From the sequence record KT919972.1: DNA of 64,000 nucleotides. One strand, given 5' to 3'. The position numbers and the translations under genes are program-made. The notes beneath the pieces were generated by a model. It saw nothing but the letters and a program-made list of their open reading frames with translations, made no database searches and was not told the origin of the DNA. Positions 29,913 to 46,099 of the stretch are shown here, piece after piece. Positions within the stretch are counted from its first letter, which is position 1. Every line of letters starts with the position of its first letter.

Positions 29913-29940
29913 AAAAAAGGGCGCTATTTGCGCCCTTTTG
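29913..29940 (-). terminator. Rho-independent terminator
   Basis: AAAAAAGGGCGC-TATTT-GCGCCCTTTT (+ strand view). Confidence 0.8.
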
Positions 29941-30454
29941 TTTTTTGTTTCTTTGCTTTTCGTTTAGCTCGTCTAAGTTCTTTTCGTTTAGCGATTTTAT
30001 CTGCTCTTCGAACTGCGTCGTAATCAGCAGCACAAGACGCAGCAAACGCATCAGGTTTGAACACGGGCTCTTGACCAACATATCCCAATATAGTACCTTT
30101 AGCTTCGTTATAGGCAACGTGAGATTTGTGTGTGGGGTCAGGGTTGATGTCAACGTGAACTTCAAAGCCTCTAGTACCGCACATTGGCTTAACCATTAGT
30201 GCAGTTTCACCCGCTTTGTATACTTCATTCATCAATCGACTTCTGATACCATCTTTACATGATAAGTATGCAGGTTCAGTCTCAACTGCTTTAAACACTT
30301 GAGCACCTTTACTACCTTCAAGATGAATTATGATCACAGTCGCGTAACTAATCATGTCACTTTTACGCTTACTATCACACCCAACGTATATTGTGCTATT
30401 TGGATGACTGTTATTGATAGCTGTTTCTATCGCTTCCCAATCGAACATTTTCAC
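29924..30454 (-). CDS. RNase H-fold protein, YkuK/DUF458-like
   Basis: IYVGCDS...YATVIIIH...SRLMNEV...EVHVDIN...KP.AFAAS.AAD; basic C-terminal tail. Confidence 0.75.
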   Translation of the reverse strand: MKMFDWEAIETAINNSHPNSTIYVGCDSKRKSDMISYATVIIIHLEGSKGAQVFKAVETEPAYLSCKDGIRSRLMNEVYKAGETALMVKPMCGTRGFEVHVDINPDPTHKSHVAYNEAKGTILGYVGQEPVFKPDAFAASCAADYDAVRRADKIAKRKELRRAKRKAKKQKTKGRK

Positions 30455-30497: not shown

Positions 30498-31934
30498 TTA
30501 AAAACTGTAGCGTTCGACGCCTACAGTTTTCATCATGATCTTGATTGGCTCAAGCTCACCACCCAACAGTGAAGTCAAGATAGATGGGCTACAACCAGAT
30601 ACCAGTGCAGTACCCGCTTCACCAGCTTTAACCGGAACGTTGCCAAGACGACCACGAATGTTCCAGAAGACCAGTTGTGGCATTTCATAACCAGCACGTG
30701 CGTACTTGGCTTTGATTGCATCGAAGTTCGCAGGTTCACCGCGACCGTACCAACCACCACCAGTGTTTGCTTGATCGAATTCCATGTCACTCATGATAAG
30801 CAACTTGGTTGGCATATCTTCTTGTGAAAGATTTGCACGCTTCGCACGCTCTAGCAGAACATCAAAGCACTTACCGATGTTCGTACTCATGTCTTCGCCT
30901 GAACGATTCATGTTATCAAGACGCTCTTTCAATGAGCTACCGCGCAACTGGTGGAAGTGCGGGTCGCTTGAGAACGAAATGAATTGATCTTTGAAGATGC
31001 CTTCATTGCGTTCAGCAACATAAATCCCAAGAGACATTGCAACTTGCTTACAAGTCACACCTGAATGGTCTGTACCTGCGTTGATTGGCGTGCTCATAGA
31101 GCCAGACACGTCAACAACAGGGATGATGCGTTCATCAGAACCTTCCATGTAGTTTGGCAGAGCTTTCCATTGCTCGTTCGCTACAGACGCATTACCGTGA
31201 CTAACGCTCTTAACGACATCGTATGGGAACAATGCGCCAGCGTTGATCTTCGCTTCACCTTTTTGAAGTGACTCGATGTAGCTTGTGTAACGAGCTGAAG
31301 CGTTACGACCGAATGCTTGTTGATAACGAGCAGACGCTACAGAAGGCAACTTACCGAAGTCGATTGCATCCCATTTTTGCGCACACATCTTCTGCTCAAC
31401 AGTGTCAGACAGAAGCGACAGAATCTTACGCCACTGCTTCGCAGTCACGCCAAGAGACTTGATTGTGCGCTTGAACACATGACCGTTTTTGCTGTTTTCA
31501 CGTGGGAACCACTTCGCAGCAAGACCATTCTTGTCATTGACAATTGCGTTCGACCACATTGTAATCGCATCTTTTTCAAGACGTGTACCGAAAGCAGAAA
31601 TCAAGTCATCGTAACGACCTAGTTCTGGAATTTTCGACATTACAGCACGAGCTACGTCAGGCTGTTCATTACAAAGTTTAGTGAATAGAGTACGGAAAGT
31701 ACCACGTTCACCCGCACCACCTCGAACATCACGAGACCACAAAAGAATGCGAGTCGCTAGTTCTGGGTTTTCTGCAAACGCACGACCGAACAGTGTTTTA
31801 GACTGATCGTTGCCACGCATAGCAGCAATACCGAAGAACAAGTTTAGACACTCGTTACCTGAAGTGCTGTGAGTAACTGCACCGTTTGCTGTGCGTGAAT
31901 CGTTTGTTTGCATTGCGTTCATAAATACTGACAT
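30498..31934 (-). CDS. DUF2828 family helical-domain + vWA protein (Ro60/TROVE-like architecture)
   Basis: RDVRGGAGER, GRYDDL, AAKWFPRE in the helical part; vWA MIDAS DVSGSM, LLIMSDMEFD, LVFWN. Confidence 0.88.
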   Translation of the reverse strand: MSVFMNAMQTNDSRTANGAVTHSTSGNECLNLFFGIAAMRGNDQSKTLFGRAFAENPELATRILLWSRDVRGGAGERGTFRTLFTKLCNEQPDVARAVMSKIPELGRYDDLISAFGTRLEKDAITMWSNAIVNDKNGLAAKWFPRENSKNGHVFKRTIKSLGVTAKQWRKILSLLSDTVEQKMCAQKWDAIDFGKLPSVASARYQQAFGRNASARYTSYIESLQKGEAKINAGALFPYDVVKSVSHGNASVANEQWKALPNYMEGSDERIIPVVDVSGSMSTPINAGTDHSGVTCKQVAMSLGIYVAERNEGIFKDQFISFSSDPHFHQLRGSSLKERLDNMNRSGEDMSTNIGKCFDVLLERAKRANLSQEDMPTKLLIMSDMEFDQANTGGGWYGRGEPANFDAIKAKYARAGYEMPQLVFWNIRGRLGNVPVKAGEAGTALVSGCSPSILTSLLGGELEPIKIMMKTVGVERYSF

Positions 31935-31970
31935 TGTTCATTTCCTCATAATTAATTGCTGTAAAATGTC
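31930..31970 (-). promoter_or_regulatory. 5'-leader hairpin covering the DUF2828 start codon
   Basis: GACATT-TTACAGCAA-TTAATTATGAGGAAATGAAC-AATGTC; the 3' strand contains the ATG; T4-type early promoter GTTTACA..TATAAT (-10 at 31983-31988) just upstream. Confidence 0.6.
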
Positions 31971-35037: not shown

Positions 35038-36753
35038 ATGAGTTCTATTAATTTACCTGGCGGAGGACAACCTCTACCAAAATACGTCGAAGAAGCGCCT
35101 GTAAATGGGTTACTATACGGTCGTAAAGATGAAGCATGGGAGCCAATCCCTGAAGATTCACTAACACCGTTTCCATTAGGAACGACACCTAATTCATTCG
35201 ATGCAGAGACTGGCGACAGAGCCGCAGCAATCGCTCTAAGAGACGCTTATGCATCAGCAAACCCGTCATGGGTTGCGTTTTATGTAAACAACCCGACATC
35301 TGCGATTGACCTTGTATATGAAGACATTTCTGTTGGCGGGACAGTTGCTGAAAGACAAACGTATACAGGAACACAATGGATTTCACAGCGTATTGTTGAA
35401 GGGATACCCGGGCCAATCGGGCCATCAGGTGAAGGGTCAATCCCTCCATTCGCGTCGATTGCTGAACGCGATTCTTTCTTCGCGTCATCAGGGAATAAAT
35501 CACTATTGAAAAAAGGATTACCTGTATTCGTTCAGGAATTTGAAGGTCGAGCAAGCTCATATTATTGGAGAGGCGAGACAAACCCAAATACGTACGATGC
35601 TTCTAAGTTCTCACTAGCCGCAGTTCAATCAGGGAACGGTGATTTATACTTAGCAAATGCGCATAAGATATCTTCGTCAGGTCAGAATATAGCAATAACC
35701 AATATTATCGACAACGTGAGCTTTCACCCCGTATGGCAGACATACGAAGAAGGGAATACTGCAACGGTACGTGTGCGTTCCATCGAGTCTGTTAATGAAT
35801 ATTCTGATAAATCAGCACAGATAACTAACCCGCGTTGGGAACTAGTGCAGATGCCAAACAACAGAACGTTATACTCAGTTGTGGTTGATTTTGTCAATGC
35901 ATACGATGAAATTGATGTTGTCGTTTATAAAAACACAGATGAATATTACCAAACTAAAATATTCGATATTACACCGGGCGAAGTTGATGTATTAATCGAA
36001 CCACCGTTTGACATTCGTTCAATGGACGTGCTTGAGCTTGAGTTGCGCAACCCGAACTTAGATGTTGTAGTATGGGGTAACTTATCAACAGGAATCCCAT
36101 GGAATAAACCAACAACACGTGATTTTACCGATGAGACTGTTGTGATTCAACCTGATTTAGATGCAGTCGAAACAAGAGTAAGTGACATCGAAGCAAACGC
36201 GATTGTCACTGGGGATAATGTTTCTGAACTGACAAATGACGCGGGATATATTAGCGACAAAGACATCATTTTCCAGAAGAGCAATAATACTGGAACTAAC
36301 GTGTTAACGCTAAACGGGACAGGTGAGGAGGGTACTATCCCACTATCGCAAACCGATGAAAATGGGGTGTTATTCGAATACTCGTCAACTACTGATAATT
36401 TCAGACCACTTGAAGATAAACCAATGCACATCAAACTTAGAATAAGTATTGATCGTTCTGGTGGCGGGTCAGACCCTGAGATTATAACGTGGGTTGAATC
36501 AGCAGCGACAGACACAACAGTTCCTAATGCATTTACACAAGAAACATCAGCATTTCGAATGGTTGATCTGCAAACCGACCGTACATTATTTTTAATCGAT
36601 ACGATTTTAAATATGGACTCAAGTCGTTATTATCGCATAAGACTTCGTAATTTAAACGGCGACAATTTTGATGTTGATACATTCGGCCCGTTTACAACAA
36701 GTTCGGGTAATGATATTTTTGCACCCGCAGTTGAGTTTATGCTTAGTCGATAA
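35038..36753 (+). CDS. putative trimeric virion appendage protein with an N-terminal foldon-like motif
   Basis: [22 protein letters not shown] resembles the fibritin foldon [33 protein letters not shown] fibre-type motif. Confidence 0.6.
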   Translation: [571 protein letters not shown]

Positions 36754-36829: not shown

Positions 36830-37073
36830 AGACATTCGAGAAGTGTTTTATCGTCTTTCCTTAAATCTCATTTGACTATAACGATGTTTCTCATCGGAAA
36901 AATACCCATGATTCGGCATGAGTCCTATTTCGTTTGACAGTACGAACACCGTCTTAATGGTCATTTCCTACCATGAGAATGCGTCAGGCTCACGTCATCA
37001 CTGAGAAAGCAGCTAGTGCGCCTCATTACTATTAAAGTTTGCTTTGATTTGTAATGATTGCTGTACAATGTCT
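36830..37073 (-). ncRNA. structured ncRNA A (244 nt, helix+ACAGCAA family)
   Basis: ends pair (AGACATT/AATGTCT); ACAGCAA follows the 5' strand; 39-nt 3' block shared with ncRNA B. Confidence 0.65.
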
Positions 37074-37084
37074 TATTGCGAATT

Positions 37085-37173
37085 TGGCGGAGATACTGAG
37101 ATTCGAACTCAGAGAACGCTATTAACGTCCGACACCTTAGCAGGGTGCTGTCATACCTTTAGACCATATCTCC
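37085..37173 (-). tRNA. tRNA-Ser(GCT)
   Basis: cloverleaf, long variable arm, loop CT-GCT-AA, encoded CCA. Confidence 0.93.
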
Positions 37174-39091: not shown

Positions 39092-39319
39092 AGACAATAC
39101 CGAAGTGTTTTTTCGTCTTTTGCATAAATCGGAGTTGACTAGCTTATTGTTTCTCAACAAGCAAATATCGTCTGTTTCAGCGACGCGCCTATCTGACTAT
39201 TTCTAGACAGAGAGAATCTTTCCTTTCAAGCTGCGCCTAAGCAAGCTCAGGTTAAAATCAGCCCAGGTTAAGATCATCACTTCTTTTAAGTAATTTCAAT
39301 TGTTTGCTGTATATTGTCT
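39092..39319 (-). ncRNA. structured ncRNA B (228 nt, helix+ACAGCAA family)
   Basis: ends pair (AGACAATA/TATTGTCT); ACAGCAA follows the 5' strand; 3' block shared with ncRNA A. Confidence 0.65.
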
Positions 39320-39382
39320 CTCTCACCATGCTCGTGATATGCCGAAGCAAAGTATCATTTGTCGCATGATAAGAGCTTAATA

Positions 39383-39458
39383 TGGCACGCCGTATGAGAT
39401 TCGAACTCATAACCCCATCCTTAGAAGGGACGTGCTCTTCCAATTGAGCTAACAGCGC
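39383..39458 (-). tRNA. tRNA-Arg(TCT)
   Basis: loop CT-TCT-AA, CCA. Confidence 0.92.
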
Positions 39459-39532: not shown

Positions 39533-39607
39533 TGGTGGACACGCAGGGAGTCGAACCCTATCTTCCTCATTGCAAGTGAGGCGCTTTCCCAATTAAGCTA
39601 ACGGCCC
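39533..39607 (-). tRNA. tRNA-Ala(TGC)
   Basis: CCTCA-CTTGCAA-TGAGG, G3:U70; irregular lower acceptor stem. Confidence 0.82.
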
Positions 39608-40254: not shown

Positions 40255-40260
40255 GTAACT

Positions 40261-40375
40261 GAGTGTTATTACTAGCGTCGTCCAGACCAGTGATACCGAC
40301 ACTGAAGAGGAATCGAACCTCGAACTTTTCTTTTCATCAGAAGAATATTAGTAAATTGTTTGCTGAAAACACTCT
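40261..40375 (-). ncRNA. circularly permuted tRNA-mimic (YrlA-like) RNA
   Basis: closing GAGTGTT/AACACTC + TCAGCAA; then T arm GAGG-TTCGATT-CCTC, looped acceptor-like stem CAGTG/CACTG, GG-containing D-like hairpin. Confidence 0.65.
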
Positions 40376-40383
40376 ATGGTATT

Positions 40384-40457
40384 TGGCTGGGGATAACAGA
40401 TTCGAACTGATACCAACGCATTCAAAGTACGTTATGCTGCCTTTACACCAATCCCCA
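40384..40457 (-). tRNA. tRNA-Gln(TTG)
   Basis: T1-A72, loop CT-TTG-AA, G73, CCA. Confidence 0.92.
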
Positions 40458-40621: not shown

Positions 40622-40697
40622 TGGCGCTTCATGTTGGACTCGAACCAACGACTCTCTGATTAACAGTCAGACACTCTACCAACTGAGTTAATGAAGC
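40622..40697 (-). tRNA. tRNA-Asn(GTT)
   Basis: TCTGA-CTGTTAA-TCAGA, G73, CCA. Confidence 0.93.
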
Positions 40698-40773: not shown

Positions 40774-40785
40774 TTGAATTTAAAC

Positions 40786-40843
40786 AGTAATCCTTTTTGC
40801 TTTTTCCAAATAAAAGTTTTGTATTGTTTGCTGTAAGATTACT
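40786..40843 (-). ncRNA. minimal helix+ACAGCAA RNA (58 nt)
   Basis: AGTAATCT/GGATTACT closing helix, TACAGCAA, internal CTTTT-ATTTGGA-AAAAG hairpin. Confidence 0.55.
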
Positions 40844-43327: not shown

Positions 43328-43443
43328 TGGTAGTCGGGGCTGGATTCGAACCAGCGACCACGTGCTTAACAGGCAATTGAAGGAGTGCTGGAGCGATACT
43401 TGTCAGTATCATTCTTCGTGCTCTACCACTGAGCTACCCGACT
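43328..43443 (-). ncRNA. tRNA-Asn(GTT) body with a 41-nt structured insertion at position 28/29
   Basis: removing 43376-43416 gives a regular 75-nt cloverleaf with CGTGC-CTGTTAA-GCACG and CCA. Confidence 0.8.
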
Positions 43444-43448
43444 ATAAA

Positions 43449-44947: not shown

Positions 44948-45316
44948 TCATTTCTCCAGAAATCGACCAACTTTCGCAGCGAAGATGTTTGCTTCTTCTG
45001 TAATACGAGCAGTCGATTTAATTTGATGAAAAGCGTCTTGTTGATGTAGCTCATCGAGCTTATCTGCACATTTCATCAATTCTTTTATAGTTTGCATAAT
45101 CTCAATATTATCAAACTGACTTGTATCAGGGTGATAATTTAGATTGTCTAATATCGGCAGAACTTGTTGATAGCAACCCATGCCAATGAAGTTTATCATA
45201 AGTCTATACTGCATTTCAACAGCAAATGTACAATATTTTCGAAGATTGCGCTTTACAATCTCACAACGATGCAATATACAATCAAGTTCGTCATTTATGT
45301 CATTAAACTTATTCAT
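44948..45316 (-). CDS. hypothetical protein
   Basis: GAGGG SD before MNKFND. Confidence 0.7.
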   Translation of the reverse strand: MNKFNDINDELDCILHRCEIVKRNLRKYCTFAVEMQYRLMINFIGMGCYQQVLPILDNLNYHPDTSQFDNIEIMQTIKELMKCADKLDELHQQDAFHQIKSTARITEEANIFAAKVGRFLEK

Positions 45317-45330
45317 AAACCCTCGAAAAT

Positions 45331-45455
45331 TGGAGGAGAGTACGGGATTTGAACCACGTGACAAAAAGATTTACCTAGTTATTAAGGTTTGCAGCATGAA
45401 TGCTTGTCAGTATTCTTTAACATTCTTTTGCTCTACCAGACTGAGCTAACTCTCC
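45331..45455 (-). ncRNA. tRNA body with the anticodon loop replaced by a ~54-nt module
   Basis: GGAGAGT acceptor, D arm, AAAGA/TCTTT stem enclosing GAATACT-GACA-AGCATTC-ATGCTGCAAA, T arm, TCCA. Confidence 0.7.
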
Positions 45456-45461
45456 AGAATT

Positions 45462-45580
45462 TGAAGGTGAAGTGCAGGACTCGAACCTGCGACCTCCGGC
45501 GTGCATGTGAATGCAGAATGAAATCTTATCAGACTTCGTTTTTTTTGGCCGGCATTCTAACCAACTGAACTAACTTCACC
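45462..45580 (-). ncRNA. Asp-like tRNA body with the anticodon loop replaced by a ~47-nt module
   Basis: D arm GTTC-AGTTGGTTA-GAAT, CCGGC/GCCGG stem enclosing GAAGTCT-GATA-AGATTTC-ATTCTGCAT; no CCA. Confidence 0.7.
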
Positions 45581-45594
45581 AATGTAAAAACATA

Positions 45595-45719
45595 TTGAGC
45601 AGGGTGCAGGATTCGAACCTGCGTCACGATCTTGGAAATGATATGCTAAATTGATTGCAGAATACAAACTTAACAGCTTGCGTTTATGCTACGTGTGCTA
45701 GCCACTACACCAACCCTGC
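45595..45719 (-). ncRNA. Gly-like tRNA body with a 49-nt insertion at position 28/29
   Basis: GCAGGGT acceptor, U73, residual loop ATTTCCAA; insert holds a hairpin + ATTCTGCAA; 17-bp extended acceptor duplex. Confidence 0.75.
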
Positions 45720-45976: not shown

Positions 45977-46099
45977 TGGTCGAGTGTAACGGAATCGAAC
46001 CGTTCCCACGATCTCCCTATGATATGCGTAAATTGGTTGCTGAATATAATCATGTCTGATTACAGTATGCTACGTGTGCTGCCACTACACCAACACTCG
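45977..46099 (-). ncRNA. Pro-like tRNA body (AGG) with a 49-nt insertion at position 28/29
   Basis: C1-G72, A73, CCA; loop AT-AGG-GA; insert holds a hairpin + ATTCAGCAA; 21-bp extended acceptor duplex. Confidence 0.75.

What the first reader, a model, noticed from the sequence alone, without database searches (positions are those of the whole stretch)
45331..45580. Two adjacent tRNA bodies whose anticodon loops are entirely replaced by the module
Seen: 45331-45455 has a normal acceptor, D arm, 5-bp AAAGA/TCTTT stem and TCCA end, but about 54 nt in place of the loop, including GAATACT-GACA-AGCATTC-AT-GCTGCAA. Its GACA-loop hairpin closely resembles the one in the Asn chimera (GATACT-GACA-AGTATC). 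45462-45580 has an Asp-type D arm and CCGGC/GCCGG stem enclosing GAAGTCT-GATA-AGATTTC-AT-TCTGCAT, with no CCA. No usable anticodon is apparent in either. Inference: these cannot decode, so they are best read as tRNA-shaped carriers (elbow + acceptor) for the protein-binding arm, a non-permuted YrlA equivalent. Automated tools would label them pseudo-tRNAs.
Basis: partly seen in the sequence, partly recalled or inferred. Interest (0 to 1): 0.66.

Follow-up and report, generated by a model that had tools for sequence, protein, structure and literature searches.

The report
tRNA-shaped phage RNAs with docking arm
Two neighbouring "pseudo-tRNA" genes of a KVP40-like Vibrio phage are conserved tRNA-shaped RNAs that carry a small hairpin-plus-CUGCA tag in the anticodon arm. 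The same tag lies beside genes for a Ro60-like protein in many phages, so they are probably that protein's RNA partners rather than dead genes.

Summary
The window is Vibrio phage phi-Grn1 (KVP40-like). Both tRNA bodies exist on the minus strand at the stated coordinates. KVP40 annotates their orthologues as tRNA-Pseudo-4 and -5.

They are two of exactly five genes in the window with one fixed module: a 7-bp hairpin, a 4-nt loop, 3 nt, then C(A/U)GCA. All seven stem pairs covary.

One correction: gene B (45331-45455) still holds an intact Asn-type loop sequence, AUGUUAA. Gene C (45462-45580) has no anticodon in any of five orthologues.

The motif (a helix, 2-4 nt, then CNGCAA) also occurs in two other settings:
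- in the mRNA leader of the phage's DUF2828/DUF7788 protein;
- within 260 nt downstream of that gene family in 49 of 69 unrelated viral loci, against 8-14 of 62-72 in control windows.

The protein's predicted fold matches Ro60 over about 400 residues (Z 14-17), but its sequence does not.

Best reading (about 0.55): stable tRNA-shaped carriers of a docking arm for this Ro60-like protein. They work like YrlA but are not YrlA members. A protein-dependent intron remains possible (about 0.15). No RNA data were available.

The scan has flagged the same system before in sister phages (KVP40, ValKK3). I found no description in the literature I could search.

The parts
45331..45455 (-). Gene B: a tRNA-shaped RNA (KVP40 tRNA-Pseudo-4 orthologue). 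It has an acceptor stem, D arm, AAAGA/UCUUU stem, T arm and encoded CCA, with 54 nt between the anticodon-stem strands.
   Evidence: Rfam tRNA 48.2 bits. Sequence read. Seven orthologues are 84-94% identical.
45417..45423 (-). AUGUUAA in B, an Asn-type anticodon-loop sequence directly 3' of the AAAGA strand. In the primary transcript no stem closes it.
   Evidence: GUU is invariant in 7 orthologues. Position 33 is C in K566/D482.
45385..45417 (-). Module in B: GAAUACU-GACA-AGCAUUC, then AUG, then CUGCAA.
   Evidence: Model R1 scores it 40.7 bits, E 8.5e-9. It is a row of alignment A6.
45462..45580 (-). Gene C: a tRNA-shaped RNA (KVP40 tRNA-Pseudo-5 orthologue). It has an 8-bp acceptor with G-1:C73, a D arm, a CCGGC/GCCGG stem and a T arm. 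It has no CCA and no anticodon.
   Evidence: Rfam tRNA 53.6 bits. RNAalifold consensus over 5 orthologues.
45507..45539 (-). Module in C: GAAGUCU-GAUA-AGAUUUC, then AUU, then CUGCAU.
   Evidence: Model R1 scores it 43.8 bits, E 1.2e-9.
45502..45515 (-). Second hairpin of C, UGCAU-UCAC-AUGCA. It stacks on the CCGGC/GCCGG stem and its 5' strand overlaps the CUGCA word.
   Evidence: The stem is invariant and the loop varies (UCAC, UUAC, UU-U).
45596..45719 (-). Gene D, a paralogous tRNA body. Its module (45651-45683) is inserted after nucleotide 28 of a split anticodon stem. The loop is 7 or 8 nt and holds different triplets in different orthologues.
   Evidence: 44 bits.
45981..46099 (-). Gene E, a paralogous tRNA body with its module at 46033-46065. 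It is 98-100% identical across the KVP40, nt-1, CZ01, VS2, QD01, PVA8 and V09 relatives.
   Evidence: 37.9 bits.
43331..43446 (-). Its module (43381-43413) is inserted after nucleotide 28. The UGC-CUGUUAA-GCA anticodon hairpin is intact.
   Evidence: Rfam tRNA 49.8 bits. (38.1 bits).
40785..40842 (-). Free copy of the motif: terminal helix GUAAUC/GAUUAC, then UUA, then CAGCAAACAAU.
   Evidence: Rfam Dictyostelium Class I RNA 31.8 bits, below the 41.5-bit threshold. Sequence.
40255..40384 (-). Free copy: helix GAGUGUU/AACACUC, then UU, then CAGCAAACAAU, with an internal T-arm-like hairpin.
31930..31970 (-). Leader of the DUF2828 gene: GACAUU, UUA, CAGCAA, then AAUGUC. The helix encloses the ribosome-binding site and the start codon.
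   Evidence: Conserved in KVP40, VS2, nt-1, K566 and F86.
30498..31934 (-). phiGrn1_0037, a 478-aa DUF2828 + DUF7788 protein with a predicted Ro60-like fold. It is the candidate partner of the module.
   Evidence: Pfam E 2.7e-29 and 2e-46. PHROG 850 'RNA-binding protein'. Foldseek's top 11 hits are all Ro60. VIA-align Z 14-17.

Best explanation
B and C are expressed, stable, tRNA-shaped non-coding RNAs.

The tRNA body (acceptor, D arm and T arm, that is the elbow) lets them be cut out of the tRNA-cluster transcript and stabilised like tRNAs. The anticodon arm carries a docking module: a 7-bp hairpin, 3 nt, then single-stranded C(A/U)GCA(A).

This module is recognised by the phage's DUF2828/DUF7788 protein, which is predicted to have the Ro60 ring-plus-vWA fold. 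The resulting particle would be a phage counterpart of Ro60-Y RNA. In it the tRNA-like part stays free to engage tRNA-binding enzymes, and the protein also binds its own mRNA leader.

Shown:
- the anatomy of the genes;
- their conservation, and covariation of the hairpin;
- the protein's predicted fold;
- the genomic association of the motif with this gene family.

Inferred:
- transcription and processing;
- physical binding;
- what the particle does.
For: 1. The module is a distinct, selected structure.
- The window holds five copies with identical 7-4-7-3 geometry and no others.
- On 21 distinct paralogue and orthologue copies, 95.9% of cells pair, against 68.8% when shuffled.
- All 7 pairs show changes on both sides, and 0 of 500 shuffles reach this. 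Sliding the partner column drops pairing below 50%.

2. The genes are conserved. B is 84-94% and C 91-95% identical among relatives. E and A reach 97-100% even where the region as a whole is about 89% identical. Every relative keeps B or C at this site.

3. The same motif occurs where nothing could be spliced.
- Free RNAs in the tRNA cluster carry it.
- So does the leader of phiGrn1_0037.
- In 80 viral loci chosen only for a DUF2828 homologue, CNGCAA lies within 260 nt downstream on the gene's strand in 49 of 69 distinct loci. In 31 of them a helix of at least 6 bp sits in the right register.
- Five control windows give 8-14 of 62-72 loci, and 0-4 with a helix.

4. An unrelated 183-kb contig has two adjacent module-bearing tRNA bodies about 500 nt downstream of its DUF2828 gene. 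The first has a B-like body but no GUU. A 233-kb contig has two more.

5. The protein model (pLDDT 78, pTM 0.75) matches Ro60 chains at Z 11.8-17.3 over 374-408 residues. The next class of hits is vWA domains only, at Z 8.9 or less.

6. Several points argue against decoding.
- C has no anticodon.
- D and E carry different triplets and loop lengths in different orthologues.
- A and B duplicate two intact tRNA-Asn genes.
- Their discriminator base is A or U, where the intact phage tRNA-Asn genes have G.
Against: - There are no RNA data, so expression, ends and unspliced stability are unproven.
- Binding is inferred from gene neighbourhood only.
- The protein resembles Ro60 in fold but not in sequence. 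Pfam TROVE finds nothing in the genome, and a profile search against PDB sequences gives Ro60 only E = 1.7.
- The intact Asn loop is kept in A and B. CUGUUAA is also kept in a distant Aeromonas-type relative. A mere scaffold does not explain this.
- Five viral contigs found by a strict module pattern have no DUF2828 gene. All are 4-74% complete fragments, so this is not decisive.
- B and C have little covariation of their own. The covariation comes from comparing paralogues and from D and E.
Confidence: 0.55

Rival explanations
1. The module is a removable insert, a protein-dependent tRNA intron. An endonuclease, perhaps recruited by the DUF2828 protein, would excise it. The phage's Rnl1-type ligase would then rejoin the halves, giving working tRNAs (Asn from A and B).
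For: - Removing 47 nt from B, or 41 nt from A, restores a canonical 5-bp stem and 7-nt loop with U33, GUU and A37.
- GUU is invariant in the B orthologues.
- CUGUUAA is kept in a distant relative.
- Module-bearing bodies elsewhere keep GUA and GUC loops.
- phi-Grn1 encodes a T4 Rnl1-type RNA ligase.
Against: - C, and both bodies in the 183-kb contig, have no anticodon to restore.
- D has 8-nt loops, and the triplets of D and E differ between orthologues.
- The insertion site differs: after nucleotide 28 in A, D and E, and after 38 in B.
- The motif also occurs in free RNAs and in an mRNA leader.
- The genome has no splicing endonuclease (PF01974) and no RtcB.
- Inserts of 41-54 nt are far too small for a group I intron.
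- Intact isoacceptors are always present alongside.
Confidence: 0.15
2. These are tRNAs with a permanent extra arm that still use their anticodon hairpin. They might be charged and decode. Or they might act as decoys or sponges for enzymes that read GUN anticodon loops, such as anticodon nucleases or tRNA-guanine transglycosylase.
For: - The retained loops are mostly of the GUN family: Asn twice, Asn in the Aeromonas-type contig, Tyr and Asp.
- C has a His-like G-1:C73 acceptor.
- Phage tRNAs are known to counter tRNA-cleaving defences (PMC11555353, PMC11464382).
Against: - In B the loop is not closed by a stem unless the 47-nt insert loops out.
- C has no loop.
- D and E are not of the GUN family.
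- K566/D482 B has C at position 33.
- Nothing here tests a link to nucleases.
- I judge an arm in the anticodon stem likely to clash with the ribosome, but this was not tested.
Confidence: 0.12
3. They are decaying tRNA pseudogenes disrupted by a repeat, and have no function.
For: - KVP40 and phi-Grn1 annotate several of them as pseudo or 'OTHER'.
- ARAGORN rejects them.
- B or C can each be missing in some relatives.
Against: - The genes are strongly conserved, with compensatory changes in the insert hairpin.
- The module has identical geometry in five paralogues whose stem sequences have diverged.
- The same arrangement occurs in unrelated phage lineages.
Confidence: 0.05

Closest known systems
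YrlA / bacterial Y RNAs bound by Ro60 (Rsr) (Chen et al. 2014, PMC4201824; phage phiLo Ro60 with Yrl1/2, PMC12135203)
   Same: A tRNA-like domain is joined to a protein-binding element. The RNA is encoded near a gene for a ring-shaped HEAT + vWA protein. Examples are known in phages.
   Different: - YrlA's tRNA domain is permuted: its ends emerge from the Ro-binding stem. B and C have normal tRNA ends and carry the element in the anticodon arm.
- The binding element here is a hairpin plus single-stranded CNGCAA, not the Ro-binding helix or the CGAA motif.
- The protein is DUF2828/DUF7788, not Pfam TROVE.
- The Rfam YrlA threshold is not reached.
Dictyostelium Class I RNAs (Rfam RF01414; Kjellin et al. 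2021, PMC7919456)
   Same: A short terminal stem of about 6 bp, whose sequence varies with compensatory changes, is directly followed by a conserved single-stranded motif ending in CAGCAA. The free copy at 40785-40842 matches the full Rfam model at 31.8 bits.
   Different: - That score is below the 41.5-bit threshold.
- Class I RNAs are eukaryotic and are reported as restricted to dictyostelids.
- Their known binder is the RRM protein Rnp1A.
- In B and C the helix is a capped hairpin placed 5' of the motif, a permuted arrangement, and sits inside a tRNA body.
Phage T4 species 1 and 2 RNAs (rnaC, rnaD)
   Same: They are small stable RNAs of unknown function of 119-139 nt. They are encoded in the syntenic tRNA cluster next to 57B, gene 1 and gene 3. 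rnaC has a T arm.
   Different: Model R1 gives no module hit in rnaC or rnaD, even at E up to 10 with filters off.
Engineered 'tRNA scaffolds', in which an RNA of interest is inserted in the anticodon arm for stable expression (recalled from memory: Ponchon and Dardel 2007)
   Same: The design is the same: a tRNA body provides processing and stability, and the cargo replaces or extends the anticodon arm.
   Different: That design is man-made. Here it is natural and conserved, and the cargo is one specific module.
Intron-bearing tRNA genes (archaeal/eukaryal bulge-helix-bulge introns; bacterial group I introns)
   Same: An insert in or next to the anticodon loop whose removal would restore a tRNA (true of A and B).
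   Different: - The genome encodes no splicing endonuclease.
- The insert is too small for a group I intron.
- Some members have nothing to restore.
- The insert also exists outside tRNAs.

Membership tests
tRNA (Rfam RF00005) | Cloverleaf with acceptor, D and T arms that scores above the 29-bit gathering threshold | tested here: met
   B scores 48.2 bits and C 53.6 bits, both matching the full model with a long insertion.
tRNA (Rfam RF00005) | A 5-bp anticodon stem closing a 7-nt loop that holds an anticodon | tested here: not met
   B has 54 nt and C 46 nt between the stem strands. C has no candidate loop in 5 orthologues. B has the loop sequence, but no stem closes it.
YrlA (Rfam RF02553) | Score at or above the 69-bit gathering threshold within one RNA | tested here: not met
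   The hit scores 32 bits (E 9e-4) and covers model positions 27-81 only. It spans the 3' half of C and the 5' half of B.
YrlA (Rfam RF02553) | Encoded next to a TROVE-domain Ro60 gene | tested here: not met
   Pfam TROVE has no match in the whole phi-Grn1 record at E <= 0.01, while the control genomes do match. A protein with a Ro60-like fold (DUF2828/DUF7788) lies about 13.4 kb downstream on the same strand.
Ro60/TROVE protein family (for the partner protein) | HEAT-repeat ring plus a C-terminal vWA domain | tested here: met
   The AF2 model (pLDDT 78) aligns with 9 Ro60 entries at Z 11.8-17.3 over 374-408 residues. Foldseek gives E 2.7e-6 to 2.4e-4.
Ro60/TROVE protein family (for the partner protein) | Detectable sequence homology to TROVE | tested here: not met
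   Pfam gives only DUF2828 and DUF7788. A profile search against PDB sequences gives Ro60 E = 1.7.
Dictyostelium Class I RNA (RF01414) | Score at or above the 41.5-bit threshold, with a terminal stem and the 11-nt motif | tested here: not met
   Only the free copy at 40785-40842 matches, at 31.8 bits. B and C do not match.
tRNA with bulge-helix-bulge intron | A splicing endonuclease is available | tested here: not met
   PF01974 is absent from phi-Grn1 and present in 4 archaeal control genomes. From general knowledge, bacterial hosts lack it.
tRNA with bulge-helix-bulge intron | A bulge-helix-bulge fold at the two junctions | not tested
   I ran no formal scan. None was evident by eye in the folds.
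tRNA with group I intron | A self-splicing core of about 200 nt or more | tested here: not met
   The inserts are 41-54 nt, and Rfam finds no intron family at E <= 1.

The most novel reading that the evidence does not exclude
DUF2828/DUF7788 proteins form a very large phage family: more than 7,500 clusters were found in one search. Together with RNAs tagged by 'helix + CNGCAA' they would make an undescribed class of RNA-protein particle parallel to Ro60-Y RNA.

B and C would be its non-permuted tRNA-mimic subunits. They would link the particle to tRNA-handling enzymes, or to defences directed at tRNAs. The tag would be the same device as in the unexplained Class I RNAs of social amoebae.
Probability: 0.45. 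Interest if true: 0.8.

Novelty: new variant of a known kind. Interest (0 to 1): 0.68.

Why it matters
- It turns genes carried as 'pseudo-tRNAs' in KVP40-type genomes into candidate functional RNAs.
- It gives a very abundant phage protein family of unknown function (DUF2828, PHROG 850) a specific RNA partner that can be tested.
- It extends the Ro60/Y-RNA idea, a ring protein plus a tRNA mimic, to a second protein lineage that is unrelated in sequence and to a new RNA architecture.
- It shows that nature uses the 'tRNA scaffold' design.
- If the rival reading is right instead, it would be a new kind of tRNA intron in bacterial viruses. One small-RNA sequencing experiment would separate the two.

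Tried and rejected
- **RNA evidence.** No listed run holding this DNA is on record as RNA. The four runs I laid were contigs with DNA-like, even coverage, from relatives or metagenomes. Their joints came from host tRNAs or from indels in relatives. Splicing and expression could therefore not be tested.
- **Pfam TROVE.** No match in the phi-Grn1 genome.
- **Rfam YrlA hit.** Rejected as an artefact of two adjacent tRNA halves.
- **Bare CNGCAA in gene leaders.** It occurs in the 130 nt upstream of DUF2828 genes in 11 of 76 loci, which is chance level. About six of these have the helix in register. The real enrichment is downstream of the gene.
- **Genome-level co-occurrence.** I scanned viral contigs with a strict module pattern. 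Of 81 matches, those with a perfect hairpin were all in tRNA bodies. Five such contigs had no DUF2828 homologue, but they are 4-74% complete, and five control contigs also had none. The test is inconclusive.
- **T4 rnaC and rnaD.** They are syntenic but have no module.
- **Other motif words in the genome.** Those at 148101 and 155202 of the record lie inside coding genes and are taken as chance.
- **The 571-aa ORF at 35038-36753 beside the cluster.** No Pfam or PDB match, and no motif in its leader.
- **Origin of the bodies.** A to E are not recent copies of any canonical tRNA in the cluster.
- **Alternative pairing in B.** GAAUGUU can pair with AGCAUUC and RNAalifold predicts it, but the pairing is broken in K566/D482.

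Full report
**Where we are.** The window is identical to Vibrio phage phi-Grn1 (KT919972.1, same coordinates), a KVP40-like member of the genus Schizotequatrovirus. A tRNA cluster runs on the minus strand from about 46100 to 37085. ARAGORN finds 28 tRNAs there and none in 45331-45580. The cluster is syntenic with the T4 tRNA region next to genes 57B, 1 and 3.

**The observation.** I read both genes on the minus strand.
- Gene B (45455->45331) has a 7-bp acceptor stem, a D arm, an AAAGA/UCUUU stem, a T arm and an encoded CCA. There are 54 nt between the two stem strands.
- Gene C (45580->45462) has an 8-bp acceptor that includes a G-1:C73 pair, a D arm, a CCGGC/GCCGG stem enclosing 46 nt, and a T arm. 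It has no encoded CCA.
- Rfam's tRNA model matches both over its full length, at 48.2 and 53.6 bits.
- KVP40 annotates the orthologues as tRNA-Pseudo-4 and -5. GenBank labels phi-Grn1's own copies tRNA-Asn and tRNA-Phe.

One correction is needed. The first 7 nt of B's insert read AUGUUAA, a canonical Asn anticodon-loop sequence, so B's anticodon has been displaced rather than replaced. C has no such loop.

**The module.** Five genes in the window share one layout: a 7-bp stem, a 4-nt loop, 3 nt, then C(A/U)GCA. I call them A (43331-43446), B, C, D (45596-45719) and E (45981-46099).
- A covariance model built from 21 distinct copies finds exactly these five in 64 kb, at 37.9-44 bits. The next hit scores 12.8 bits.
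- The stem sequences differ between paralogues and orthologues but stay complementary. 95.9% of cells pair, all 7 pairs show changes on both sides, and 0 of 500 shuffles reach this. Slid controls pair below 50%.
- One caveat: I collected the copies with a filter allowing at most one stem mismatch. However, the BLAST orthologues I aligned all pass it.
- Rfam 15 has no family for the module.

**Where the module sits.**
- In A, D and E it interrupts the 5' strand of the anticodon stem after nucleotide 28. A small anticodon hairpin is left intact: CUGUUAA in A, and 7- or 8-nt loops in D and E.
- In B it follows position 38.
- In C it lies between the anticodon stem and a second 5-bp hairpin capped by a variable 3-4 nt loop.

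**Conservation.**
- Orthologues exist in ten fetched relatives.
- A and E are 97-100% identical even to KVP40 and nt-1, whose whole region is about 89% identical.
- In B the hairpin and AUGCUGCAA are invariant, while a second small hairpin varies by indels.
- In C the A-rich linker and the loop of the second hairpin vary, and everything else is fixed.
- Every relative keeps B, C or both at the same site.
- This rules out simple decay.

**Do they decode?**
- C cannot.
- D carries UUCC, UUC, UCU or UCAU in loops of 7 or 8 nt, and E carries AGG or UAG, depending on the phage. True orthologous tRNAs do not change like this.
- B keeps GUU in all seven orthologues, but K566/D482 have C at position 33.
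- A and B duplicate two intact tRNA-Asn genes in the same cluster.
- Their discriminator base is A or U, where the intact phage tRNA-Asn genes have G.
- From memory, G73 matters for AsnRS recognition. I did not test this.

**The same motif outside tRNAs.**
- CAGCAAACAAU occurs three more times on the same strand inside the cluster. At 40785-40842 and 40255-40384 it directly follows the 5' strand of a terminal helix. The first of these matches Rfam's Dictyostelium Class I RNA model end to end at 31.8 bits, below the threshold.
- It also lies in the leader of phiGrn1_0037 (30498-31934, minus strand). There GACAUU-UUA-CAGCAA is followed by AAUGUC, which contains the start codon. The helix encloses the ribosome-binding site. 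This leader is conserved in five relatives.

**The protein.**
- phiGrn1_0037 is a DUF2828 + DUF7788 protein and belongs to PHROG 850, 'RNA-binding protein'.
- Its family is huge: more than 7,500 clusters were found in one search.
- An AlphaFold model (pLDDT 78, pTM 0.75) has Ro60 structures as its top 11 Foldseek hits.
- It aligns with Ro60 at Z 11.8-17.3 over 374-408 residues. Other proteins match only through the vWA domain, at Z 8.9 or less.
- Sequence methods do not see this relationship.

**Association test.** I fetched 80 viral loci chosen only for a DUF2828 homologue of 46-54% identity, plus one close relative.
- CNGCAA lies within 260 nt downstream on the gene's strand in 49 of 69 distinct loci. 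It is usually 20-100 nt past the stop codon, often occurs twice, and is preceded by a helix strand and 2-4 nt. In 31 loci a Watson-Crick helix of at least 6 bp is in register.
- Five control windows gave 8-14 of 62-72 loci, with 0-4 helices. The controls were the opposite strand, +1.5 kb, +2.5 kb, inside the gene, and upstream.
- A subset of loci carries the motif in the leader instead. Their helices differ in sequence but stay complementary, and in some a permuted tRNA-like domain sits inside.
- In one 183-kb contig, two adjacent module-bearing tRNA bodies lie about 500 nt downstream of the DUF2828 gene. The first has a B-like body without GUU.
- A 233-kb contig has two more. One of them keeps CUGUUAA.

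**An independent scan.** I scanned 2.9 million viral contigs with a strict module pattern.
- All matches with a perfect hairpin were in tRNA-like bodies inside large tRNA clusters. Some keep GUA or GUC loops, and each cluster also has the intact isoacceptor.
- The five contigs I tested from this scan's hairpin-passing matches had no DUF2828 gene, but all are fragments.
- Genome-level co-occurrence therefore remains unproven.

**The intron reading.**
- For it: excision would restore canonical Asn arms in A and B. The GUU loop is conserved over a long evolutionary distance. The phage has a T4 Rnl1-type ligase.
- Against it: the genome has no splicing endonuclease and no RtcB. The inserts are too small to self-splice. 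Some members have nothing to restore. The insertion sites are not uniform. The motif is present in free RNAs and in an mRNA leader.
- No RNA run was available to look for joined reads.

**Literature.**
- YrlA-type Y RNAs beside true Ro60 genes are known in bacteria and phages (PMC4201824, PMC12135203, PMC7824862).
- In the searchable library, DUF2828 appears only in gene lists from plant studies and one tardigrade genome paper.
- I found nothing on module-bearing phage tRNAs.
- The original KVP40 genome paper could not be read.
- Class I RNAs are described as a 6-bp terminal stem plus an 11-nt motif, and as restricted to dictyostelids (PMC7919456).

**Verdict.** B and C are real, conserved, tRNA-shaped RNA genes carrying a selected module. 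That module is genomically tied to a protein with a Ro60-like fold. They work like Y RNAs but belong to no described family. Earlier agents of this scan reached similar readings on sister phages. I re-derived the key points here and also weighed the intron alternative.

Noticed in passing
window 45417-45428 and 45397-45403 (- strand): In B the heptamer AAAGAAU is duplicated. The copy that holds GUU (GAAUGUU) can pair with the hairpin's 3' strand AGCAUUC better than the module's own 5' strand can, since the latter has an A.C mismatch. RNAalifold predicts this alternative. The pairing is broken in K566/D482.
   Followed up: partly
window 43331-43446 and 45331-45455; L074:8060-8170; L121:2340-2480; L169:2890-3004: Anticodon loops retained in module-bearing tRNA bodies are mostly of the GUN (queuosine) family: Asn three times, Tyr and Asp. 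C has a His-like G-1:C73 acceptor. D and E do not fit this pattern.
   Followed up: partly
window 45331-45580 compared with L002-L011: B and C look interchangeable. phi-Grn1, KVP40 and V09 have both. nt-1 and QD01 have only C. CZ01, PVA8, VS2, K566, D482 and F86 have only B. The gene always sits next to the homologue of ORF 44948-45316.
   Followed up: partly
window 39180-39385 and 36940-37090 (- strand): Two further CAGCAA copies lie at 39299-39311 and 37053-37063, the second with one mismatch. Their helix partners are less clear. They are possibly more free partner RNAs.
   Followed up: partly
window 29924-30448 (- strand): An RNase H-like DUF458 protein (Pfam PF04308, E 4e-17) is encoded directly downstream of the DUF2828 gene. 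I did not check whether this pairing recurs in other phages.
   Followed up: no
window 39536-39607 (- strand): A tRNA-like gene that ARAGORN misses (Rfam tRNA 44.9 bits). Its loop reads CUUGCAA and its acceptor stem is mismatched. GenBank flags it as pseudo.
   Followed up: no
window 40625-40697, 43331-43443, 45466-45579, 45598-45719: The GenBank labels look wrong. 40625-40697 is called tRNA-Asp, but ARAGORN reads Asn (gtt). A is called Val, C is called Phe and D is called Cys; these appear to be guesses made by treating the insert as an intron.
   Followed up: partly
L002:4280-4397 (KVP40), and run X10's relative at window 45581-45602: KVP40 and another relative carry about 118-120 extra bases between C and D. 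The KVP40 stretch shows no tRNA shape by eye.
   Followed up: no
L121:3197-3272: A jumbo-phage fragment encodes a tRNA with a CTA anticodon (amber-reading), which ARAGORN calls 'Pyl'.
   Followed up: no
window 35038-36753 (+ strand): A 571-aa ORF that abuts the tRNA cluster has no Pfam match and no PDB sequence match.
   Followed up: partly
L047:3870-4000 and L075:1560-1690: Directly upstream of some DUF2828 genes, the motif's helix encloses a permuted tRNA-like domain in which the T arm comes before the D arm. This is a YrlA-like layout paired with a protein that is not a TROVE protein.
   Followed up: partly
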